Below the pieces are notes generated by a model. The model was not told where the DNA came from, made no database searches, and was given only the letters and a program-made list of their open reading frames with translations. From NCBI RefSeq assembly GCF_964204865.1, contig NC_135252.1, positions 2,790,001 to 2,854,000 of the forward strand: 64,000 nucleotides of DNA. Reading direction: 5' to 3'. A program made the position numbers and the translations under genes. Shown in pieces: positions 1-59,600 of the stretch. Numbering within the stretch: position 1 is the stretch's first letter; every line of letters starts with the position of its first letter. Origin of the DNA: Styela clava. Taxonomy: Eukaryota.

Positions 1-2263
1 GGCCCGCCTCTTTTGTTTGGGGAAGCTTGGGAGACAAGGACACAGGTATTATAAATAGGATCTACTTCAGGTGACATCTCGGTCAAAATGTTGAAATATC
101 GGCTTATTACCATATTTTTGTAATATTAACAGGTGAGCAGTCTGAGAAGGCATTGCGTTCGGCCGAAGATAAAGAGAGACTATGGCCCGCCTCTTTTGTT
201 TGGGGAAGCTTGGGAGACAAGGACACAGGTATTATAAATAGGATCTACTTCAGGTGACATCTCGGTCAAAATGTTGAAATATCGGCTTATTACCATATTT
301 TTGTAATATTAACAGGTGAGCAGTCTGAGAAGGCATTGCGTTCGGCCGAAGATAAAGAGAGACTATGGCCCGCCTCTTTTGTTTGGGGAAGCTTGGGAGA
401 CAAGGACACAGGTATTATAAATAGGATCTACTTCAGGTGACATCTCGGTCAAAATGTTGAAATATCGGCTTATTACCATATTTTTGTAATATTAACAGGT
501 GAGCAGTCTGAGAAGGCATTGCGTTCGGCCGAAGATAAAGAGAGACTATGGCCCGCCTCTTTTGTTTGGGGAAGCTTGGGAGACAAGGACACAGGTATTA
601 TAAATAGGATCTACTTCAGGTGACATCTCGGTCAAAATGTTGAAATATCGGCTTATTACCATATTTTTGTAATATTAACAGGTGAGCAGTCTGAGAAGGC
701 ATTGCGTTCGGCCGAAGATAAAGAGAGACTATGGCCCGCCTCTTTTGTTTGGGGAAGCTTGGGAGACAAGGACACAGGTATTATAAATAGGATCTACTTC
801 AGGTGACATCTCGGTCAAAATGTTGAAATATCGGCTTATTACCATATTTTTGTAATATTAACAGATGAGCAGTCTGAGAAGGCATTGCGTTCGGCCGAAG
901 ATAAAGAGAGACTATGGCCCGCCTCTTTTGTTTGGGGAAGCTTGGGAGACAAGGACACAGGTATTATAAATAGGATCTACTTCAGGTGACATCTCGGTCA
1001 AAATGTTGAAATATCGGCCTATTACCATATTTTTGTAATATTAACAGGTGAGCAGTCTGAGAAGGCATTGCGTTCGGCCGAAGATAAAGAGAGACTATGG
1101 CCCGCCTCTTTTGTTTGGGGAAGCTTGGGAGACAAGGACACAGGTATTATAAATAGGATCTACTTCAGGTGACATCTCGGTCAAAATGTTGAAATATCGG
1201 CTTATTACCATATTTTTGTAATATTAACAGGTGAGCAGTCTGAGAAGGCATTGCGTTCGGCCGAAGATAAAGAGAGACTATGGCCCGCCTCTTTTGTTTG
1301 GGGAAGCTTGGGAGACAAGGACACAGGTATTATAAATAGGATCTACTTCAGGTGACATCTCGGTCAAAATGTTGAAATATCGGCTTTTTACGATATTTTT
1401 GTAATATTAACAGGTGAGCAGTCTGAGAAGGCATTGCGTTCGGCCGAAGATAAAGAGAAACTATGGCCCGCCTCTTTTGTTTGGGGAAGCTTGGGAGACA
1501 AGGACACAGGTATTATAAATAGGATCTACTTCAGGTGACATCTCGGTCAAAATGTTGAAATATCGGCTTATTACCATATTTTTGTAATATTGCTAGGTGA
1601 CCAGTCCGAGAAGGCATTGCGTTCGGCAGAAGATAAAGAGAGAATATGGCCCGCCTTTTTTGCTTGGGGAATGTTGGGAGACAAGGACACAGGTAATTAT
1701 AAACAGGATCTACTTCAGGTGACATCTCGGTCAAAATGTTGAAATATCGGCTTATTACGATATTTTTGTAATATTACTAGGTGACCAGTCCGAGAAGGCA
1801 TTGCGTTCGGCCGAAGATAAAGAGAGAATATGGCCCGCCTTTTTTGCTTGGGGAACGTTGGGAGACAAGGACACAGGTAATTATAAACAGGATCTACTTC
1901 AGGTGACATCTCGGTCAAAATGTTGAAATATCGGCTTATTACGATATTTTTGTAATATTGCTAGGTGACCAGTCCGAGAAGGCATTACGTTCGGCCGAAG
2001 ATAAAGAGAGAATATGGCCCGCCTTTTTTGCTTGGGGAATGTTGGGAGACAAGGGCACAGGTAATTATAAACAGGATCTACTTCAGGTGACATCTCGGTC
2101 AAAATGTTGAAATATCGGCTTTTTACGATATTTTTGTAATATTACTAGGTGACCAGTCCGAGAAGGCATTTCGTTCGGCCGAAGATAAAGAGAGAATATG
2201 GCCCGCCTTTTTTGCTTGGGGAATGTTGGGAAACAAGGACACAGGTAATTATAAATAGGATCT
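1..2263 (+). repeat. Tandem array of about 12.3 units: 183-bp type A units followed by 184-bp type B units; runs off the left edge
   Basis: The GGCCCGCC motif recurs at 1, 184, 367, 550, 733, 916, 1099, 1282, 1465, 1648, 1832, 2016 and 2200. Identity stops after GGATCT at about 2263. Confidence 0.98.
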
Positions 2264-2470
2264 TAATTTTATTGGTTGAATAATTAGATTGCATTACTTA
2301 TGTATTCAGCAAATTTATTCTGTTACTTCGATACGCTTTGCAATTTCTGAATAAATTTAAGACAACAGATGAGAATTATTTTGAATTTCAAGCTTTGTAA
2401 CAATTGTTGTAATTGTACAGGTGACAAATCTGAAGAAGCATCTCAATCATTTGATGACAACGATCACTAA
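1..2470 (+). CDS. 3' part of a putative repeat-protein gene: tandem 96-nt exons (133-228, 316-411 ... 1597-1692, 1781-1876, 1965-2060, 2149-2244) plus a diverged exon starting at 2421
   Basis: Each unit is T-rich tract + (C/T)AG | 96 nt stop-free in two phases | GTATTA or GTAATT. Phase-1 reading is GEQSEKALRSAEDKERLWPASFVWGSLGDKDT. The unique downstream exon (tacag|GTGACAAATCTGAAG) begins with homologous GDKSEEASQSFDDNDH* (TAA 2468-2470). A further acceptor lies at 2827 and AATAAA at 2931. Confidence 0.6.
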
Positions 2471-3148
2471 AGGGTACATATTGGACCTGGTAGATGCGTT
2501 GGAATCGTTGATCCTGTAGGACGTAGGTATATAAAATTATGATTTTCATGATATTGCACTGCATTCACTAAATCCAGGCCAAATCTAACTAAATTCATAC
2601 TGCCGCAAAAATCAATTAAAACATTTCAATAATTACTCAATTTACGTACAAGAATAGATAAAGTATATTTGTTTGCGAATTTCATTTGTTTCAATATTTA
2701 AACATGCATCAGCTTTCGTATCATTCCGACATTTAATATATATATATATAAATTAACTTATCATGCTTTGCTACCTCGATACTTCCTAATGTATAAAAAA
2801 ATATTTATTATTTTTTTTTGTTTCCAGGTTCGCTCTTCTTCCTGACAATACAGATGACGGCTCGATAATGACGGATTCAGACAACGAATTTTGATTTGAT
2901 TATTTTTTCTTGTTAAACCTTATTATTCAGAATAAAAGACCTTAATGCATTGACCTTTTATTTAAATTTCGTTCACGTATAAAAAGAAAGAGGGAATAAA
3001 ACTGATTAAAACACGCGAGAGATTTTTTTAATAATTGGATCAGTGGAGTCTCACCTTTTGACAGATATTTATATTTTTGCTTGTCCGATTACCCTAACTA
3101 ACACCAGACGGCGTCGCCATAGCTACCATTTATTTCTTTCCTTTAGTA

Positions 3149-3600
3149 CATAGTTGACAAACCTGCGGCCCGCGGGCCGCATGTGACCTGCCAATAAAAT
3201 TTCGTGCGGCCCGCGAAGCATTCAGGCGATTCAGTTTATTCGGTGTATATCGGAAGAACTCCGTGAATTTCTATGAAACTGTCGCAGCAAATAGGCAGGC
3301 CACTAGTAAAAAAGCACACTTTTTCCAAGGATAATGTTTTTTCTGTTATGTATTTTTTGTCGGATGATGATTTTGCAGTTGCGTAAAGTATACAATCGAC
3401 GACTAATCCGAGTCTATTTATAATGTCTTGCTTTATTAATTTAATTGTGTGTTCAATGTAACCTACTACCCCGACAAAATAAGAACATTACTACAAAATA
3501 TCACGGCCATAAAAGGTGTTTCAAACAACCCGATTACATTTAGTTTTGATTCGTATTTTTGCGATGTTACGAATTTGAATACAAATTTGATGTGTTCTTG
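3149..3600 (+). mobile_element. Degenerate left end of a hAT-type non-autonomous transposon
   Basis: ACAAACCTGCGGCCCGCGGGCCGCATG is a typical hAT/Charlie-type subterminal motif. The internal segment near 3530-3570 resembles 17765-17810 and 18037-18075. Confidence 0.55.
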
Positions 3601-8205: not shown

Positions 8206-10086
8206 TCCTAACATATATATCCTTAAATGTGTTTCCACGGAGGACAAACTGAAATATTTTATTATCAATTCCCTGAAAATCGTAAGCGGTAAGTCATCAG
8301 GAACCAGTATGTCGGTAAATCTTGCTAGCGGCAATTTGAGTTCTTTTGATTCCACACCACAAGCATGCCAAAGTGGTCTGAGTAAATCCCTTCAGGGGTG
8401 ATTATTTTTTTTAAATTAGAAATTGAACGAGTTAAAGAGTAATTTTGGTTCAAATCTTTTTGTTCAAAGTCCTCGCCACTAATGAGAGATTCAAGACCCC
8501 CTCCCCCCTCCACGTTTTAAAATAATGAAAAATTGAAAATTGGGATTTTCAGCGCAATCTTCATTCCTAACCCTAACGGGATAAACCCTACTTATTTTTA
8601 TTGTGCGCAGTGGCGGTTTTGCTTTGTTTTTGGCGGAGGCTTGGTACAAAAGATTTCAAATCACTAACTTTTCTCTAAAATATATATATATATTATCGAA
8701 GCTTTTCATACAATCTTGTTCAGAATAAAAACAATGTGGTTAGGACGTAAACACAACTGCGATCGAGATCGGTGTGTTGAGTTGTCAAACAAGTTTTTCG
8801 AGCGAGCGAATACGCATTCAATCGTGAATGTGTGCGTTGAAGGAATTCGAGAAGTCTTTTGACAAGTCATCGCAGTGAACTAAAAAGCATTATTTCAGAC
8901 AAAATAAATGGGTATACAACAGAATAGAAGAATATGTCCCTCCAGAATAGTGTAGAAAACTAAGAGTGTTGCCAAACTTCAGGATTCCGGTAGGCGTTAG
9001 AATTCTTACATGGGTAAACTACGGCACTCAGGCCGGCACGTTGGGTAATCCAATCTGGCCCGCCTGATACTGGCACAATCAAACTAAAACCAAGTTTTGA
9101 TGTTTTAGCTCAAAATACATCAAGGAATTTGTTGAGATTGCGATTTAAATTAGTTTGGGCGCGAGGCTTATTGTTTTCCACCTTTTCTTTTGTACCACTG
9201 TGAATATTGTTCATAAAATGTAACTTTTTACGTCAGACTTACATGGCCCGCCAGTCTAGGTGGGCGAAATCTTTAGCCCTTGATCCAAAAACATAGCCCC
9301 CTCCCTTTAAATCATATAATAAATTTCTGTACCCAACTTTACGCAACTTGAATATAAACTGCAATTGGCCGCCCGTATAAATATGCCGCTTAAATTCAAT
9401 CTTTTCCCAATATAACAATTCAAGCTTCTCTTTCAAGTCCTTTAATTTCTTGTTTTGGGTTCAGAAATTTGTAGTGTTTGACTCCCCGAGCGTTAAGTCA
9501 ATTATTTTGTTGATATTTACCTGGAAATGCACTTTCCTGAAAAAATGGATCTCATCGGAAATATTACAAAAGATTGATCAGATTAGTAATATTTTATTAG
9601 TTGACTGTCGAATACAAAAATTTGCATTTTCTATTACATTTACAAGTCACGCCATACTTTTATATACAAATGGTCATTTGCGCATATAAAATCTATTTTT
9701 ATAAATTTGCGATTTTGTTAATCTAATATTAGTAGTGGTAGCACAACTCGGAAGATTTATTGAAGTTGTGTTGTAAATCACTCAGGAACCGCATAACATT
9801 TGACCGGTAGTCTCGACTGTAGCGAATGTGAATTCAGTGAAAAGGTCATTTACCCTATATCCTGATTATGATTTATCGCAACAAGCGACAAGTCTTAGCA
9901 ATGTTTCTTTGTATCGACCAAACTTTTACGTGTTCCCGTTCGAGAGATGAAAATATATTATTAATGAGATGGTTAGTGTAGAATTGCAAAATTGACCGAT
10001 AGTAAGTAACGCGAAGATCGATTTCGATTTTGAAAAAAAATGTGGTCTGTTTTTTCCCCTACAGATTGCAATGACACCAAACCCTA

Positions 10087-10436: not shown

Positions 10437-13400
10437 ATGGACAAGGTTCTGAGACCAGAGAGACTGGAGGTAGATCCTAACTCTAGGGAAGCATCCTGTG
10501 AGTGGCTACACTGGAAGAAGACTTTCGATAATTTTCTAAACGCCTTGCCGTCTGAAGGCCTTGATAAACTTGGTGTACTGGTGAATTTCATATCTCCTCG
10601 TATATTCCAAACATTGAGGAGGCAGAATCGTACGATACTGCGATTGAGATTCTGAAAACAATGTTTGTCAAACCTTTCAATGAAGTTTATTCTCGGCATG
10701 TTCTGGCAACCAGGAACCAACAAGCATCTGAAAATGTAGACGAATACATGCAAGCATTGAAATCGTTAAGCAAACATTGTAATTTCAAAGCTGTATCTGC
10801 TGTTCAAAACCGAGATGCATATGTCCGAGACGCTTTTATCCGGGGTTTAAACTCCACATGGATACGACAGCGTTTGTTGGAAAACAAACACCTTGATCTT
10901 AATACGACATACGATCAAGCCAGAAGCTTAGAAGTAGCAATTAAGAATGCTGAAGCTTATCGAGTATCCGACCCTTCTACTGTGTCTGCGGCTGCTCAAA
11001 ACAGTGAAACTCAAAACGATGAGACATCGTGTGATATCGAGAAAATATATGCTACTGCAAATTCCGCGTGCTTTTTCTGTGGCGGAAAGAAACATCCTCG
11101 TTCAAAATGTCCAGCCCGAAATGTGTTTTGTTTCAAGTGTCATAAAAAGGGACATTTCATAAAAGTCTACAGAGGAACCGTTTTCAACCCAAAAAATCCT
11201 GACGAAGTCACTGCATGTTCTAACTCGTATATATTAGGAATGGCTTTTGACAATACCCCAAAATCATTGAGAGGGTCGTCGTCTGTGATTCATATTGAAG
11301 GACACAAAGTACGCGCACTTTTTGATAGTTGCAGTAGTCAGAGTTTCATACACCCTCGTCTCATAGAAAGGTGTAACCTCCCAATCAAAAGAGACACAGT
11401 TATGGACAAGGTAGCAATGGCTTCTCTGGCGTGTTCCATGCCTATAAAAGGTTGCACAGCAGCTGATATTGAATATCAGGGCCGACACTATCAAAAATTC
11501 ATATTGAGAGTAATGGATGATCTATGTTGTGACATTTTACTTGGAATAGACTTTCAAGGACAACATCAAAGTGTAACTTATAATTACGGCGGCGATCGAC
11601 CTCCAATGTCTGTATGTGGCTTTTCAACTTTCAAAAGTTTGCCACCAGAACCATTAAAAAATCTGACTGCTGACTGCCATCCTATTGCTACAAAGTCTCG
11701 TTGGTATTCCAAAGATGATAGAAAGTTTATTGAAATGGAGGTCAACCGTTTGTTACAGGAAGGAATTGTAACGCCTAGCAGATCTCCGTGGAGAGCTCAA
11801 GTTGTCGTCGTAAAGGGTGAAAATCGGAAACGAAGGTTTGTAATCGATTATTAACAGACCATCAATAAATTTACTCAGTTAGACGCGTTTCCTTTACCTA
11901 ATATGAGCGATATAATCAACGAAATTGCTCATTATCGTGTGTATAGCACAGTGGATTTAAAAAGTGCATACCATCAGGTTCCACTTGAAAAGGAAGACCA
12001 GAAATATACTGCTTTCGAAGCTGCGGGTGCTCTGTTCCAGTTCACTCGTTTACCGTTTGGAGTCACAAATGGTGTGGCCTGCTTCCAGAGGGCAATGATG
12101 AACCTGGTAAAGGAAGAAAACCTGACCGGTGTTTTCGCGTATCTCGATAACATTACCATTTGTGGGCATACTCAACAAGACCATGATATCAACTTGCAGA
12201 AGTTTCTATAAGCCGCTAAACGACGAAATCTAAAATTGAACGAAAACAAAAGCATATTTTCGACCAGAAAACTTCAGATGTTAGGTTACGAGATTGAGGA
12301 AGGCCAAATACGTCCGGATCCTGGGAGACTAGAACCTTTGCGGCGTTTGCCGATTCTACCTCAGTTTCCGCTTTAAAGCGTTGTCTTGGGTTTTTCTCGT
12401 ACTACTCAAAGTGAATACCAAAGTTTTCTGATACTATCAGACCACTAGCATCTTCGAAAAACTTTCCCTCTCGACGACCAGGCAATTCATGCGTTTCACG
12501 AATTGAAGCGACTCGTAGAATCTGCTGTCGTTATAGCTGTGGATGAAACTTTACCTTTTGAGGTAGAAACAGATGCCTCTGATGTAGCATTGGCTGCAAC
12601 CCTAAACCAAGGTGGGAGACCAGTGGCTTTTTTCTCTCGCATGCTACAAGGTCCAGAACTCAAACACCCTTCAATAGAGAAGGAAGCAAAGGCCATCATT
12701 GAGGCTGTTCGTCATTGGCGTCACTATCTCACTTGTAAACATTTCACTCTTATAACAGATCAGAGATCCGTATCATTTATGTTCAATCGAAATCACAGAA
12801 CAAAGATTAAAAATGATAAAATCATGCGATGGCGACTCGAACTCTGCTGCTATAGTTTTGACATTCGTTATCGTCCTGGGCAAGAAAATATTCCCTCTGA
12901 TGCACTTTCAAGAATATCGTGCGCAACTGTACAAGATCCCGATAATCATCTTTTGTATAAACTTCATGACGCTCTGTGTCACCCAGGAATTACGAGAATG
13001 TCTCACTTTATTCGAGTCAGGAATTTGCCATATTCGATGGATGACATTCGAAAAGTTATTTCAACATGTCCTGTTTGTTGTGAATGCAAGCCGCGATTTC
13101 ATAAACCTGACACCGGGCACCTTATCAAAGCTACACAGGCATTTGAACGTCTCAATATAGACTTTAAAGGACCTCTACCGTCAAACAATAATAATCGATA
13201 CTTTCTGTGCGTAGTCGATGAATTTTCGAGATTTCCGTTTGCATTCCCATGTCCAGATGTTTCCTTAGCAAGTGTCATTAAATGTCTCACGCAACTATTC
13301 ACTACATTTGGAATGCCTGCTTTTATACATTCAGACAGAGGTTCTGCTTTCATGAGTCGAGAACTTCGCTCTTTTCTCAATGACAAAGGTATTGCAACAA

Positions 13401-14048
13401 GTCGCACTACACCATATAATCCTGCAGGAAATGGACAGGTTGAACGTTTTAATGGCACGATATGGAATGGGGTGAAGTTGGCGCTGAAATCGAAACGTCT
13501 TCCTGTTCAATTGTGGCATGAGGTTTTGCCTGATGTTTTGCATTCCATACGGTCGTTATTGTGTACAGCCACCAATGAGACTCCTCATGAGCGAGTTTTC
13601 AAATTCTCCAGAAGATCTACGTCTGGATGTTCTATTCCATCCTGGATGTCAACGCCGGGACCAGTGCTTTTGAAAAGATATGTCAGGAAGTCGAAAACCG
13701 AACCTTTAGTAGATGAAGTCGAGCTTCTGGAAGCAAATCCACAATATGCTCATGTTCGATTTCCAGATGGCAGAGAAACAACTGTGGCCTCAAAACATCT
13801 GGCCCCTGTCGGTTACGAAATTTCGATGAATAGGCAAGGGACAGACAATATCAACCATGAAACACCATTGCACGTTAGAGACGGAGTCTTCGATTCAACC
13901 TATGTCTCCATCTATCAATCAAGGAAACAATAAAACTCAAACGCAAGAAGATATTGTTGAAAATAATATTGTCTCTAGATCTCCATCGCCTCCAGTTCTA
14001 AGGAGATCAACCAGGGAACGCCGAACCGTAGACAGACTAAATCTCTAA
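10437..14048 (+). pseudogene. Disrupted gag-pol polyprotein of the gypsy element
   Basis: Gag start MDKVLRPERL; zinc knuckles CFFC..H...C and CFKC..GH...Y; protease ALFDSCS; RT DLKSAYHQ, LPFG and YLDN; RNase H ETDASD; integrase HHCC plus DFKGP, SDRG and GQVERFN. Stops at 11852, 12209 and 12412; frameshifts near 10610, 12355, 12460 and 13870. Confidence 0.95.
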
Positions 14049-47600: not shown

Positions 47601-50600
47601 ATGAAATCAACCTCTCACTGTATTTGGATAACTCAGGATAGGTTGTTTTCATCACTTATTAGTCAGACACTTTGGTCATTTTTCATATAAATGCTGGTTC
47701 ATCTTAGTCGCGATACCTTTATTTAGAAGTGAATTTTTGTTAGCATCCTGTTGCGCAGAAATATTTAGTATGTAATTTACATAATTTTTAAATTGATGCC
47801 ATGAATGAATAGATATTATTTTATATTTTACGAGCCTTATTATTCAGTATCTGCAATGCCGGGAGATGGAATTGTACTTCTGAATCTTGTGACGCCACAA
47901 TGAAGTGTCCGAATAACATGATATTCAGTCGACAGATGTCACTTTGCAATCAAGATACATGTGACAATGTCGTTAGAGGCGCTATTGTACTGCGATCAGA
48001 ACGAAATATGGAATGTGCCAGTGAAGTCTCCTTCCAGGGTTGCACGTGTCCAAACGGGATGGTTTTAGAGGTGAACATTTTTAATTATAGCTTAAAATAT
48101 TAAATTGGGAAAACATTTTATATATATATATATATATCAAGTTTTAATCTTGTTCATAAAAACAGCAATGAAAACGGGAAATTTTTATTTGGGAGGGTTG
48201 AAGTTCGAAAAATTGGGATATATTTTACATTTCGTTCTTGCAACAGGGAGGGCGGGGAATTATGAGGAGCATCAACTAAAATGAATTCCTCTCTATCGAT
48301 ATGCGACATTGGCCATTTCGTGTACACACACACGTCGTTGCATTTACAACGTTCCGATGCACGATTAACAAAGTTTTTTTGATCTCGCAGTGATCATAAT
48401 CGAGGGTGATACTTAAATCCCAGGAATTAAGCCTTTCCTTGAGTTCGAGTAAGGTATACTATCAATTCGGAAACTTGTGTTTTGCAGTAATATAGAAGTG
48501 TTGTATATAGCCTATATCTATAGTATTGTATATATGATATCTAGCACAGTTAACAATAACTGTATCTAGAACCTAGATGGTAGAAACATTTAAATATGTT
48601 GGAAGAATAAAATTCTGTGCCTACAAACATGAATAGATCACATGGGTTCCATGGTATTACGTGGCGCAGATTGCATTGAAAAAGATGAGCAGTGAAGTAT
48701 CCATATTCGGTATAAAAAATACATTGTTTTTGATGATAAAGTTTTGTATTAGTGTTTGAACGAATGAATATATAAAACGTTTCAACTGTACATTCATGTT
48801 AAATTTCATTACTTAACCGTCAATGAGAATAAAAAATTCACGTATCTCGCGAAGAATCATTCGAAGAATCAAACGAGATACTATGGAAAATCTAAATTTA
48901 ATCTAAAATTTTGATTTCTAAATTTTGGGCCAAAATATCAATAAGTTCGAATAAGTACGGAGAAAGATTTAATATTGCTTTGATATTAATATGTTTGAAA
49001 AGCAATATATTTTATCCCTACTTCTTCGTTGTGAAAATACTGATAGATAGTGCTTTATAGCATATACAAAGTAAAACAAATAACTAAAAATGTTGGCATC
49101 TGCTACCATTTATCATACAATTAAAACAGTCGATAAAGCTTCTATAATCCAAATATTTAGAAAAAAAATGCAATGTCAAAGGGCAAGCTTGAAAAGGACG
49201 GCAGTAAGGATTGACATATTGTGAATTACTTCAACAGATATGGCTTGACACGATAGATTGCTGTCATCGAATGTAAAAATATAACTCAATAGAAACTCTG
49301 TGTATCACTATTTCAGATTTGATTAAGGACAATATAAAATCTTATTTATGGATGCATGAGCTCCATGTATATAACGTCAACCTTTTTACCCATAATATCG
49401 AGTCCCTTCCTCGGAGCCATCTAGACTTGAATCGACTAGAAAACACTCTTATATGTTATTTTGAAAAAAATCGTTCATGTTTGGTCATTCAAAATAAACT
49501 TTCACATTTTAAGTGAGGCTTCTTCTTTCAAGTCTGGTTGTTTTGTTTCGACTGTCTCTTCTTTTTGTTCAGATTGAGCTTCTGCTGGCTGAGAAGCAGA
49601 TTCCTCTGTTTGACTGGAGTCCTTTTCTTGTGTGTCATCCGCTTGGCTCTTTTCTTTATCTTGTGATTCTGTTGCTTCTTCTGATACACTTTCAACTTCC
49701 GTTTCTTTTGCTGTCTCCTCTGCCGATTCCGTTTCTTGTGTGACTTGGTCTTCTTTGTCTTCATCAGAAGATTTTGTTTCGCTCTGAGTAGCGTCTGCTT
49801 GTGATTGTTCATTAGCGATATCTTCTAGTTCTTTTGTTACCTGACTGTCAGAAGTATCTGTATGATCGCTTTCTGCGACACTAGCCACTTCTTTTTCTTG
49901 TTTGTCTTGTGGTGGGGGAGGGGCATCGGGTAGTTTTTCCTCTGTTTCTACTTCCTCTTTAATATCTTCTTTTTGTTCGTCTTCTTTTTCACTCGTAACA
50001 GTTTCTTCCGTTTTCACTTCTTCCTGTACATTTTCAAGTGTTTCTTTCGTTTCTGGTACCTTTTCAGGCTCCGGTTGTTCGGAAACCTGCTCTGCCGCCG
50101 GTTCTTCTTGCTTTGGAACCTCAGCTGCGGCGGCCGCAGCACCTGCAACTACTGGAGCAGCTGGTGCTTGTGCTTTCTTTTTTTTAGCATTGCCGTTTTT
50201 GTGTTGACTTTCATCGTCTCTGTTTACTTGATACCTTTCTGTTTCTGAAATAGCGACAACTCCTTCCGTCTTTTTCTTGTCTTTTTTAGCTTTGCTTTTA
50301 CTCTTTCCATTGCCGGCCAAGGAGTATTTTTTAGTTTTGAAAAAATTCATTATGATACTAATCTGTAGAATAAAATCGATTGCTTATTAAGAAATGAGTT
50401 GACCACTTTGACGCAGAATTGTAGACCAACTTCCAATATGTGGCACTCTACACGGATACCTTGGGCGGGGCTCACATTCACTATATACTTTAAGCTACGG
50501 TACTAGTATTAGCCATCGTAGTTTTATACAACGACATGTAATGAGACAGTCAAAACATTGTTCAATTCACGTGACACGACGTGAGTTGTTTTAAATAAAT

Positions 50601-56600: not shown

Positions 56601-59600
56601 GTGGCTCGTGGGTAAATAAACTTTCAGTAAATGGGCATATTTCATGGCTGAGTATATTCTTATTGCGTGAATATGGTAAAACTGCTTTCTGCAATTTTAT
56701 CACGCGTTTTACCCAACTATCGTTTTTTACCCATATACTCCTATTGTGTAAATGGGTGTGGATATATGGTCTCAATCAGCATTTGAATTTTGGGCTCCAC
56801 ATTAGTACACACAAGACTGTCGTATACTGTACTGTCGCATTTTACATCCCCTTTATATTATTAAATTTACAAGGTATCTCAATCCCCAAATAGCTCATTT
56901 GCATCGATCGCTTTGACATCTGGTTATTACTACATCTGGTTAAATCAACCCTTTTAACATGATTCAATACAATACCAAGTAAATGCACGACGGATGAGAA
57001 AAAAGATCTGTGAATTCTGTCGGTTTCTATTCAATTATTATAAAGGATTTGGGTTCCAACTACTATCTAAAATTCAAATCATTCGCAAATTTCCTAAACA
57101 ACTCATTCACCAGAACGCTCAATTTTTGAAAAAAAAAAATATGTTTATTCTGAGATCGTTGATCCACATATTCTCGAGGAGATTATTTGTGCACAATAGA
57201 CTGACTATGTGATATACTGAATGACGTATATTCTGTATTTGTTAAAAAGCTTTTGATCTTTTGTCCCTGATTTTCCAGCCGTGTAGAGTTTGAAACGGGC
57301 CTTATTTGTAACACCTTTTTCAACCGTGGCCAGGCACTGAGTCGGGCATGTAAAAAGTTTTTGATTTGGGTTAAACGGTACGTTTTGTTTGCGGAAATTC
57401 AATAAGGAAATCTGAACTATACTATTCATGTGAACTTGAATATATTTGTATTTTCAAAAAATTCGTTCAATTTCACTTTAATTACTTAGCCTTCCGTAAG
57501 ACAGTAATTCCGTAATGTGTCTTCACTCTGATATCACAATATTTATCAACTTGGATAATATGAGACAAAATTCTGGTTTCGACATAGACAAAACATTTTT
57601 GCGAAATATTTTAATCACCATGTCAAATATATGTGTAGGGCAAGATAAGCACATTCTAAATTTAAATGGTCCATTACTTTATGTCGCTTCATGTAAGAGC
57701 AGTTGCTATCAAATAAGTACAAGTAAATCTGTTGAATTCTGGTATCTTTTTTCGTCAATCTTTCAATTATATCTTTTATTTGAACCAGGGTGAACACTGC
57801 ATAGATCCCACTGAATGTCCGTGCAAACATAACGGTCAGACTTATCAACGTAATTCGACTATCAAACGCGATTGCAATACATGGTAAGCAAAATTCAGAA
57901 CTTTTTATTTGTATTAAATGTAGAATGAAACGAATTTTTATGTTCATTTCAACGGAAGAGAAAATTTCTTAAAACGTCGCAATAAGGAACAACGACCTAT
58001 CATCTGTTTACTAATCCCAACTACACATAATCTTTTCTACTACCAAAACCATGCTAAAACACCAAGCTGATCACATCGAACTTGTGGGTAGATCATCAAG
58101 ATGTTTGTTAAATTTCCCACGTCACAGCTTTAAAAATTATACCCAACTAATTGGAAAGAATCGTGGATCATAATCACTATAGTAACTAGTAAAGCCATAT
58201 ATTTGAACACCAGTTGCTAATTACCTTCTCCTTATGAATTGTATTCACAATCTTTCTATTCTTTTTCTTATTGTTTATTAACTCAATCTGACAATGTTCT
58301 ACAAACCAATATATATTTCAAAACAATTGTTCCCTCTCCGCTATCCAACCTACAATTTCGATCATTCAAACTTGTTTTGACTTTTCTTTCACTGTCACGG
58401 TTGAACAATTATTACTTTATGCAATATTTATGACTAAATTCTCAATTTAATCTTCAATCTAACACGACCAAACGCGATCATCTCTGCGAAAGCTATTCAA
58501 GGAGCTTCACGTCAATTTTTAAGCGAAGTGTCGCTTGTTAGATGCTGTATTTACATGAAATTATTTCCGTATCGTTAGCTGGATTTTGCGCCAAACTAAT
58601 GGGGTCCACGTATCTGGAACGAATAACTGGTTAACTTTTCCCCTCACCCAACATGGAGTGAAAACCGAACGAGAGACCGTAGTGCTCTATAATCTATAGG
58701 ATTAAGACACCTTACCTACTGCTCTCTCACCTGGGATAAATACGAAAATTCCTATGCTCTGTGTGTTCTTTTTCACGCCATTTCACACCAACAAAACTGT
58801 CACACACAACTCTGTTTATAAACTGTTGGAAAAATGTCATACTAAATTTCAAACAAGCAAAAGACACCTTACCTACTGCTCTCTCACCTGGGATAAATAC
58901 GAAAATTCCTATGCTCTGTGTGTTCTTTTTCACGCCATTTCACACCAACAAAACTGTCACACACAACTCTGTTTATAAACTGTTGGAAAAATGTCATACT
59001 AAATTTCAAACAAGCAAAAAATTTAACACATAACGTAATATAATTTACTAACTGGTAATTCATGACAGCACTTGTGATGGGAAACATTGGATTTGCACCG
59101 AAAAGGTTTGCGCAGGTATTTGCGTTGCAACTGGAGACCCTCATTACGTTACATTCGATGGAGCAACTTACTCATTTGAGGTGAGACGATCTAACTCCTA
59201 TATACCTTGACTATATGAAATTAGGCGAAATTTACCTTTAGCTATGACAAATATTAATACCCTCCATATCCATACTAACTAGATTATATTAAAAAAAATT
59301 TAGATGCTATTTTTATAGTGATCGCAAAGTCCCCAATTTCTGTCCATCGCGAAAGCTTATCTGCCAAAGTTTTACTTTCTGTATTATGGGTTGCCGGTAC
59401 TTTTCTCTATAAACACGCACCGACAAATTGTTTTTCTACTTGATATCGATTTTAAATCCCTTCATTCAATTACAAATTCGTTTTCTCGCTAATTACTTGT
59501 TGTAATTGCCTGGTCAAAGCAAATGAAACAAAAGGAGAAAAATCCAATGAAAACAATCAATAGCCCATAATGAACGTTCTATCTTACTGTGACGTCACAA

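What the first reader, a model, noticed from the sequence alone, without database searches (positions are those of the whole stretch)
1..2526. An apparent satellite is a tandem exon-intron array encoding a 32-aa repeat
Seen: every 183/184-bp unit divides into an 87/88-nt GT...AG segment containing stops and a 96-nt segment (a multiple of 3) without stops in phase 1 or phase 0. The only indel between unit types falls in the intron part. Three variants (TCT>TCC, GCC>GCA, TTG>TTA) are synonymous in phase 1 but not in phase 0. The last unit's intron runs into unique sequence, and the next unique exon (2421) starts with a diverged homologue (GDKSEEA versus GDQSEKA). Inference: a gene expanding by unequal crossover of symmetric exon cassettes. 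Repeat maskers and ORF finders would miss it. The frame is not fully settled, because phase 0 also stays open and would stop at 2517.
Basis: partly seen in the sequence, partly recalled or inferred. Interest (0 to 1): 0.8.

Follow-up and report, generated by a model that had tools for sequence, protein, structure and literature searches.

The report
Satellite-like array is a peptide-precursor gene
What looks like a 183-base satellite in the sea squirt Styela clava is a transcribed, spliced gene in which each repeat unit is one exon plus one intron, giving a secreted protein of 14 near-identical 32-residue modules that is probably cut into many copies of a short tryptophan-rich peptide.

Summary

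**Structure.** The array has 14 units, each a 96-nt exon plus an 87/88-nt GT..AG intron. It starts 284 bp left of the window and ends at 2263. Upstream lie a TATA box, an ATG/signal-peptide exon and a 20-nt exon.

**Transcript evidence.** Contigs of RNA-like public runs join exon 1 to exon 2, exon 2 to a repeat exon, repeat exon to repeat exon, and repeat exon to the exon at 2421. Introns carry about 30-fold less depth than exons, while a DNA run covers them. This fixes phase 1: 491 codons, stop at 2468-2470.

**Genome distribution.** The unit is not dispersed. Relatives are a family of about a dozen genes at four or five loci, all built the same way: a conserved acidic spacer ending Glu-Arg/Lys, a hypervariable Trp-containing core, then Gly.

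**Known relatives.** Three paralogues are in RefSeq as "uncharacterized protein" of Styela clava. Nothing related was found outside this species, and no paper mentions them.

**Interpretation.** The closest known analogue is the tandem peptide-encoding exons of the Xenopus laevis magainin and caerulein genes. Processing into peptides and a defence role are inferred, not shown.

The scan had already noted this same stretch in an overlapping window.

The parts
1..45 (+). 3' part of module exon R2 (type A). The exon begins 51 bases left of the window.
   Evidence: RNA-like contigs join exon 2 to this exon's start
46..132 (+). 87-nt GT..AG repeat intron, type A. The same intron lies at 229-315, 412-498, 595-681, 778-864, 961-1047, 1144-1230, 1327-1413 and 1510-1596. 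The 88-nt type B intron lies at 1693-1780, 1877-1964 and 2061-2148.
   Evidence: It is a chimera of the last intron's 5' end and intron 2's 3' end. The equivalent intron left of the window is skipped in run X1 and covered in DNA run X7.
133..228 (+). module exon R3, type A, phase 1-1: EQSEKALRSAEDKER + LWPASFVWGSL + GDKDT
316..411 (+). module exon R4, type A
499..594 (+). module exon R5, type A
682..777 (+). module exon R6, type A
865..960 (+). module exon R7, type A. The first base is A instead of G, so the split codon reads Asp instead of Gly.
1048..1143 (+). module exon R8, type A
1231..1326 (+). module exon R9, type A
1414..1509 (+). module exon R10, type A, with Arg>Lys at the residue just before the core
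1597..1692 (+). module exon R11, type B: DQSEKALRSAEDKER + IWPAFFAWGML + GDKDT
1781..1876 (+). module exon R12, type B (core IWPAFFAWGTL), identical to the first module R1 left of the window
1965..2060 (+). module exon R13, type B
2149..2244 (+). module exon R14, type B, the last module
2245..2420 (+). last coding intron. Only its first 19 bases belong to the repeat.
   Evidence: A contig of run X5 joins a module exon's end directly to 2421 (loose end GACAAATCTGAAGAAGCATC...).
2421..2526 (+). terminal coding exon. It holds a degenerate spacer (DKSEEASQSFDDNDH), the stop at 2468-2470, then 3'UTR. The exon end at 2526 is inferred.
   Evidence: Paralogue C2-a keeps an extra Trp-rich core here, which this gene has lost to the stop.
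2828..2955 (+). putative last 3'UTR exon with AATAAA at 2931-2936. The putative UTR intron 2527-2827 is not tested.
   Evidence: read from the sequence; the segment is conserved in paralogues C2-a and C2-b

Best explanation
**Shown.**
- This is a protein-coding gene of Styela clava on the + strand.
- Left of the window lie a TATA-type promoter, exon 1 and a 20-nt exon 2. Exon 1 carries the ATG and a 20-residue hydrophobic signal sequence.
- Then come 14 tandem 96-nt phase 1-1 exons separated by 87/88-nt introns, and a short terminal exon with the stop at 2468-2470. That is 491 codons.
- The gene is transcribed and spliced at exactly these borders.
- The array arose by tandem duplication of a cassette made of the 3' end of intron 2, the exon and the 5' end of the last intron. 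It was then amplified very recently: nine type A units are 99-100% identical, introns included. Symmetric exons keep the frame whatever the copy number or exon skipping.

**Inferred.**
- The product is a secreted polyprotein. Each module is an acidic spacer ending in an invariant Glu-Arg (once Glu-Lys), followed by an uncharged Trp-rich core and then Gly-Asp/Asn.
- The cores are LWPASFVWGSL (9 copies) and IWPAFFAWG(M/T)L (5 copies).
- The likeliest fate is cleavage after the Arg/Lys and trimming to the Gly, possibly giving a C-terminal amide. One transcript would then release 14 copies of an 11-residue peptide, so the array acts as a dose amplifier.
- The likeliest role is host defence or chemical defence. 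This rests on the family pattern (conserved signal and spacer, hypervariable core) and on the amphipathic Lys-containing cores of sister genes.
For: **Gene and splicing.**
- Structure of the array.
- 5' exons and signal peptide.
- Splice junctions with GT..AG in RNA-like contigs from two studies, with an exon-to-intron depth ratio of about 30:1 and the introns present in a DNA run.
- X1 held 0.34 of the sampled words of window 1-3000, which matches my estimate of about 0.33 for exon-only 31-mers.

**Family and its architecture.**
- Same architecture in paralogues.
- Three paralogous genes have RefSeq models with this splicing and with isoforms that differ by module exons.
- The unit is confined to the family's loci.
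- Chimeric repeat intron.

**Polyprotein reading.**
- S, K, R, S, E, R and W are invariant in the module alignment.
- The core diverges faster than the flanking intron. Within one gene the values are intron 0.94, spacer 0.96 and core 0.52.
- Module length varies from 30 to 35 residues between paralogues.
- AlphaFold gives no confident fold for a two-module paralogue (pLDDT 49, modules below 50).
- The nearest language-model clusters are bombinin, temporin/FSAP and apidaecin precursors, at 0.77-0.80, which is a lead only.
- Tandem peptide-encoding exons with quasi-zero divergence are described for the X. laevis magainin and caerulein genes, and read as a way to boost peptide output: PMC3731216.
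Against: - No peptide or protein data exist. Processing, amidation and function are inference.
- The cleavage context is not a canonical dibasic or furin site. It is Glu-Arg before the core and Gly-Asp/Asn after it.
- This gene's cores carry no charge, unlike classical cationic antimicrobial peptides.
- Variants within the array show no purifying selection (4 synonymous, 12 non-synonymous).
- The runs are labelled RNA only by a guess, and they are contigs, so strand, ends and module number per transcript are not shown.
Only the 5' 1.1 kb was.
- In X1, exon 2 is joined to a type A exon although the reference has a type B exon first. This means either exon skipping or a different array in that animal.
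- No Pfam family matches.
Confidence: 0.6

Rival explanations
1. A secreted repeat protein that stays intact and works as a 14-module protein, for example a tunic, adhesive, clotting or lipid-binding component. It would not be a precursor of small peptides.
For: - There are no canonical dibasic sites.
- The uncharged hydrophobic Trp-rich stretches alternate with charged stretches, as in some amphipathic repeat proteins.
- The depth on the module exons is very high, which would suit an abundant structural product, although depth is a poor measure.
Against: - The hydrophilic spacer is conserved and the hydrophobic part is hypervariable. This is the reverse of folded repeats.
- Module length varies from 30 to 35 residues, and module number varies from 1 to 14 between genes, isoforms and assemblies.
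- No confident fold is predicted for a natural two-module paralogue (a single-sequence model and so weak evidence).
Confidence: 0.2
2. The same polyprotein mechanism, but the peptides are signals (neuropeptide, hormone or pheromone-like amidated peptides) rather than defence molecules.
For: - Many copies of one short peptide ending before Gly is the classic neuropeptide-precursor layout.
- The cores are uncharged, which is untypical of antimicrobial peptides.
Against: - No dibasic sites flank the Gly.
- The cores are hypervariable between recent paralogues, whereas receptor ligands are usually conserved.
- Sister genes encode amphipathic Lys-rich 16-mers.
- The family is not found outside the species.
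Confidence: 0.15
3. A non-coding satellite or transcriptional noise. The open frame and the GT..AG borders would then be chance.
For: - Four of the six frames are open in the 96-nt segment.
- The substitution pattern within the array is neutral-like.
Against: - Spliced junctions lie exactly at the predicted borders in two studies.
- An in-frame ATG and signal peptide lie upstream.
- Paralogous genes have the same exon logic but different unit lengths of 183, 190, 242-296 and 447 bp.
- RefSeq holds protein models of paralogues.
- The unit is absent elsewhere in the genome.
Confidence: 0.02

Closest known systems
Xenopus laevis magainin and caerulein genes (pipid skin defence-peptide genes with tandem-repeated peptide-encoding exons; Roelants et al. 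2013, PMC3731216)
   Same: - A secreted precursor with a signal exon followed by tandem exons.
- Each of those exons encodes one spacer plus one peptide.
- The duplicated exons have near-zero divergence, ascribed to recent duplication, unequal crossing-over or gene conversion.
- This is read as a way to raise peptide yield per transcript.
   Different: - No sequence relation: Pfam FSAP_sig_propep and Bombinin do not match.
- The host is a tunicate, so the likeness is convergent.
- Sites are monobasic Glu-Arg/Lys instead of the usual Lys-Arg.
- This gene's cores are uncharged 11-mers.
- The introns are so short (87 nt) that the array passes for a 183-bp satellite.
Insect polyprotein antimicrobial genes (apidaecin; Drosophila Baramicin A, PMC8423362)
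   Same: Tandem repeats of peptide plus spacer are cut from one secreted precursor. Copy number varies. An apidaecin cluster is among the nearest language-model neighbours, at 0.77, a lead only.
   Different: From my own knowledge, those repeats lie inside one exon and are cut at furin-type or dipeptidyl sites. Here each repeat is its own phase 1-1 exon, and there is no furin motif.
Styela clava clavanins and styelins (haemocyte antimicrobial peptides)
   Same: Same species. These are small secreted prepropeptides whose products are C-terminally amidated (table of PMC10608444). From memory only, the clavanin precursor also has a short propiece after the signal, and a Gly followed by an acidic extension.
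   Different: - One cationic His/Phe-rich peptide per precursor.
- The word search with a family member did not bring them up.
Tandem duplication of symmetric (phase 1-1) exons in general (exon-shuffling rule; Kondrashov and Koonin 2001, as cited in PMC3731216)
   Same: Symmetric exons can be duplicated, deleted or skipped without breaking the frame. RefSeq isoforms of a paralogue differ by whole module exons.
   Different: The usual examples are folded domains (Ig, EGF, kringle). Here the cassette is a 32-residue spacer-plus-core module.

Membership tests
Tandem peptide-exon polyprotein precursors (kind: X. laevis magainin/caerulein type) | N-terminal signal peptide on its own exon | tested here: met
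   Exon 1 encodes MAAKIAVFILAMMVCSLGLI. It is spliced to exon 2 in RNA-like contigs. The signal peptide was judged by eye; no predictor was run.
Tandem peptide-exon polyprotein precursors (kind: X. laevis magainin/caerulein type) | Tandem, near-identical exons, each encoding one spacer plus one peptide, frame-preserving | tested here: met
   14 exons of 96 nt, phase 1-1, 93-100% identical. Exon-exon junctions are seen.
Tandem peptide-exon polyprotein precursors (kind: X. laevis magainin/caerulein type) | Proteolytic release of the repeated peptides | not testable with these tools
   Only an invariant Glu-Arg/Lys before the core and a Gly after it. No peptidomic data are available.
Frog skin active peptide family (Pfam PF03032) / bombinin (PF05298) | Sequence match to the family profile | tested here: not met
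   No Pfam hit for the modules or for four RefSeq paralogues, at E up to 10 and 0.01 respectively. Atlas similarity is 0.77-0.80, below the level that counts.
Styela clava clavanin/styelin precursors | Detectable sequence similarity of the precursor | tested here: inconclusive
   The word search with P0001 returned only this family's own members. The profile search returned only P0001. No direct comparison was made, because no tool supplied the clavanin precursor.
Classical neuropeptide precursors | Peptide copies flanked by dibasic sites, with Gly-Lys/Arg for amidation | tested here: not met
   The cores are followed by Gly-Asp/Asn and preceded by Glu-Arg/Lys. No Lys-Arg or Arg-Arg pair flanks them, except one Lys-Arg in a paralogue module.
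Non-coding satellite DNA | Long arrays, often at several genomic sites, without splicing or a reading frame | tested here: not met
   There are 14 units at one site. The only related units lie in paralogous genes. The array is transcribed and spliced.
RiPP-type multi-core precursors (conserved recognition flanks, variable cores) | Cassette layout of conserved flanks and variable cores | tested here: met
   Spacer identity is 0.77-0.96 against core identity of 0.49-0.79. This is a likeness of layout only.
RiPP-type multi-core precursors (conserved recognition flanks, variable cores) | Dedicated modifying enzymes and modified products | not tested
   Neighbouring genes were not examined for enzymes, and there are no chemical data.

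The most novel reading that the evidence does not exclude
The family would be an animal-encoded cassette system for small modified peptides. Conserved acidic flanks would guide processing, and possibly modification, of hypervariable Trp-rich cores. Candidate modifications are Trp bromination, as in styelin D of the same animal, amidation, or cross-linking. Satellite-like exon arrays, whose copy number differs between individuals, would set the dose. This gene's uncharged W-P-A-x-F-x-W-G peptides would then be a new class of ascidian defence or signalling compound, with no counterpart among known antimicrobial or neuropeptide families.
Probability: 0.12. Interest if true: 0.8.

Novelty: new member of a known kind. 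Interest (0 to 1): 0.5.

Why it matters
1. It is a clean, RNA-supported case in which a tandem array that repeat finders would call a satellite is in fact the coding body of a gene.
   - Older annotation of a paralogue shows only 1-2 of the six modules seen in this assembly.
   - Such genes are therefore easily truncated, collapsed or masked.
2. It uncovers an uncharacterised family of about a dozen secreted multi-peptide precursors, apparently restricted to Styela clava.
   - This animal is already known for unusual haemocyte peptides.
   - The predicted products can be synthesised and assayed directly.
3. It parallels the tandem peptide exons of Xenopus defence genes in a distant chordate. 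The founding duplication junction is still readable in the intron.

Tried and rejected
**Readings rejected**
- **Phase 0.** Rejected. The ATG/signal exon and the 20-nt exon put the repeat exons in phase 1.
- **Dispersed satellite.** Rejected.
- **Selection signal from within-array variants.** Too few variants and a neutral-like pattern. It was not used as evidence.

**Searches that found nothing**
- Pfam on single modules and on RefSeq paralogues gave nothing.
- A profile of eight modules against 1.84 billion representative proteins gave only one true hit, a Styela clava paralogue. The second hit, P0002, is a low-complexity chance match.
- Paper searches for the LOC identifiers and for three core motifs gave nothing.
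- Reviews on clavanins and styelins gave no precursor sequence to compare.

**Weak results**
- AlphaFold on a natural two-module paralogue gave low confidence and no fold. No fold search was run on it.

- The 491-residue product was not searched, folded or printed. Single exons and natural RefSeq paralogues were used instead.
- For the same reason, and because of the length limit of the word search, I could not tell whether this gene itself has a RefSeq model.
I dropped that step and judged charges by eye.
- I spent it on the 5' 1.1 kb, to fix the frame and to avoid the long repeat.
Full report
**1. The observation**

- Tandem Repeats Finder reports a 183-bp period, 12.3 copies and 98% matches at window 1-2263.
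- Each unit splits into a 96-nt segment and an 87- or 88-nt segment. The shorter segment begins GT, ends AG and carries stops in all three frames.
It is also open in two reverse frames, so openness alone proves little.
- The only indel between the two unit types lies in the intron part.
Over the whole array there are 4 synonymous and 12 non-synonymous variants in phase 1, against 1 and 15 in phase 0. That is a hint, not a proof.

**2. Place in the genome and extent**

- The window is C3:2790001-2854000 of a 377-Mb assembly.
- The array begins at C3:2789717, 284 bp left of the window, and holds 14 exons. One is type B, then nine are type A (99-100% identical, introns included), then four are type B.
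- Upstream (locus L014) lie:
  - a TATAAAA box;
  - an exon with an ATG that encodes MAAKIAVFILAMMVCSLGLI and ends CAG|GT;
  - a 20-nt exon.
- By arithmetic, exon 1 leaves two bases and exon 2 leaves one. The repeat exons are therefore read in phase 1.

**3. Transcript evidence**

- *Junctions in run X1, which is labelled RNA only by a guess.*
  - 9155>9329 and 9348>9950, both GT..AG.
  - A joint that 'goes back 96', which is an exon-exon junction between two module exons.
  - Loose ends carrying the last bases of a preceding module exon in front of ACAG|GTGA.
- *Depth.* X1 depth is about 21 in introns, against 640-960 on exons 1 and 2 and far more on the module exons. The DNA run X7 covers the introns. 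X1 therefore behaves as RNA.
- *Word share.* X1 held 0.34 of the sampled words of window 1-3000. My estimate for exon-only 31-mers is about 0.33.
- *Second study.* Run X5 has a contig that passes from the end of a module exon straight into GACAAATCTGAAGAAGCATC..., the exon at window 2421.
- *Resulting reading frame.* In phase 1 that exon reads DKSEEASQSFDDNDH and stops at 2468-2470. The phase 0 stop at 2517-2519 is irrelevant. The reading frame has 491 codons.
- *One oddity.* In X1, exon 2 is joined to a type A exon, whereas the reference has a type B exon first. This is either exon skipping or a different array in that animal.

**4. Not a dispersed satellite, but a gene family**

- The unit, a profile of eight modules, and the promoter-plus-exon-1 segment find relatives only at a few loci:

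| Locus | Content |
|---|---|
| C2:12.02-12.05 Mb | at least four genes |
| C3:10.64 Mb | a head-to-head pair |
| C3:17.6 Mb | six promoter hits |
| C2:16.55 Mb | one gene |

- All members have the same plan: signal exon, 20-nt exon, phase-1 module exons, terminal exon.
- Unit lengths differ between genes: 183/184 bp here, 190 bp, 447 bp, and about 242-296 bp.
- The repeat intron here is a chimera. Its first 19 nt match the last intron and its last 49 nt or so match intron 2. This is the scar of the founding cassette duplication.
- The 447-bp unit of a paralogue keeps much longer pieces of both introns. It was therefore amplified independently.

**5. The module**

- Each module is an acidic spacer with invariant S, K, R, S and a final Glu-Arg, then a core that begins x-Trp, then Gly followed by Asp or Asn.
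- The cores in this gene are LWPASFVWGSL (9 copies) and IWPAFFAWG(M/T)L (5 copies), each followed by GDKDT. By eye they carry no charged residue.
- Sister genes carry amphipathic, Lys-containing cores such as FWGLFVPLVKKAIEEI, FWWIPLVAKIVNAVER and FPLQWIVPIVKAIKGL.
- Identity between paralogous modules:

| Segment | Between paralogues | Within one gene, two module types |
|---|---|---|
| 80 nt of intron before the exon | 0.67-0.82 | 0.94 |
| Spacer | 0.77-0.92 | 0.96 |
| Core | 0.49-0.79 | 0.52 |

- The core thus changes faster than the neighbouring intron. This is the pattern of defence-peptide and toxin genes, and the reverse of folded repeats.

**6. Identity and relatives**

- The module profile, run against 1.84 billion representative proteins, gave one true hit, P0001. 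P0001 is XP_039260439.1, 'uncharacterized protein LOC120336745 isoform X4 [Styela clava]'. It is the C2-b paralogue.
- The word search added LOC120342639 and LOC120342297.
- The four isoforms of LOC120336745 have one or two modules and differ by whole module exons. This assembly has six modules there. The older assembly therefore either collapsed the array, or copy number differs between animals.
- Pfam finds nothing.
- No paper holds the LOC identifiers or the core motifs.
- The ESM Atlas places two paralogues nearest to bombinin, temporin/FSAP and apidaecin precursor clusters, at only 0.77-0.82. By the tool's own figures that is a lead and no more.
- AlphaFold gives no confident fold for a natural two-module paralogue.

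**7. Mechanism**

- *Shown:* a spliced gene for a secreted, 14-module protein, built by tandem duplication of a symmetric exon cassette.
- *Inferred:* the protein is a polyprotein cut after the invariant Arg/Lys and trimmed to the Gly, possibly with amidation. The known peptidylglycine amidating route needs a C-terminal Gly. Clavanins and styelins of this species are amidated (table of PMC10608444).
- One mRNA would then yield 14 copies of an 11-residue Trp-rich peptide.
- The closest described parallel is in Xenopus laevis. [quoted passage not shown]
- There is no sequence kinship with the frog genes, so this is convergence in a tunicate.
- A defence role is my best guess at about 0.35-0.4. 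A signalling role, or an intact structural repeat protein, remain open.

**8. Limits**

- The runs are contigs with a guessed RNA label.
- No protein or peptide data exist.
- Other tunicate genomes could not be searched.
- Whether this very gene has a RefSeq model could not be settled.
- The idea that clavanin precursors share the 'Gly then acidic tail' logic comes from my memory and was not tested.
- Earlier notes of this scan on the same stretch (s1-825746, s1-825878, s1-810910) have titles that agree with the reading reached here. Their follow-up is withheld, and I did not rely on them.

Noticed in passing
window 10661-13933 (+): Ty3/gypsy-type retrotransposon. One ORF carries a gag-aspartyl protease domain. 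Another carries RT-RNase H plus integrase domains.
   Followed up: partly
window 3242-3600: Dispersed repeat. More than 40 copies at 73-84% identity lie on many contigs of the genome (query positions 979-1337). It starts next to a GC-rich palindrome at about 3166-3200. Possibly a SINE or MITE.
   Followed up: no
window 58704-59019: Perfect tandem duplication of a 157-bp unit, 2.0 copies, 100% identical.
   Followed up: no
window 49502-50350 (-): 282-codon ORF with no Pfam match.
   Followed up: partly
L015 3800-6470 (C2:12023800-12026470, +): Paralogue C2-a has five 102-nt exons with core FWGLFVPLVKKAIEEI and one exon with core MWPAGMFSWGVL. Its terminal exon still encodes a last Trp-rich core (GTYWTWWMR then stop), which the window's gene has lost to the stop at 2468. 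The first copy of its array is a 5'-truncated exon at C2:12024658-12024732.
   Followed up: partly
L016 6048-8398 (C2:12036048-12038398, -): Paralogue C2-b (= RefSeq LOC120336745) has a 447-bp unit made of a 90-nt exon and a 357-nt intron built from long pieces of the last intron and of intron 2. This is an independent amplification. One module exon ends in a stop (FLRAV*) and is used as an alternative 3' end in RefSeq isoforms X1 and X3.
   Followed up: partly
L019 (C3:17604001-17612000): More distant branch of the family, with genes in head-to-head pairs. The modules are on 102/105-nt exons with cores such as FWWIPLVAKIVNAVER. Six promoter hits lie between C3:17607421 and 17647502.
   Followed up: partly
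L014 9153-9768 (left of the window): A low-depth X1 contig retains introns 1 and 2, so it is probably pre-mRNA. It differs from the reference by four bases and an 8-nt deletion at 9184, so the sequenced animal is not the reference animal.
   Followed up: no
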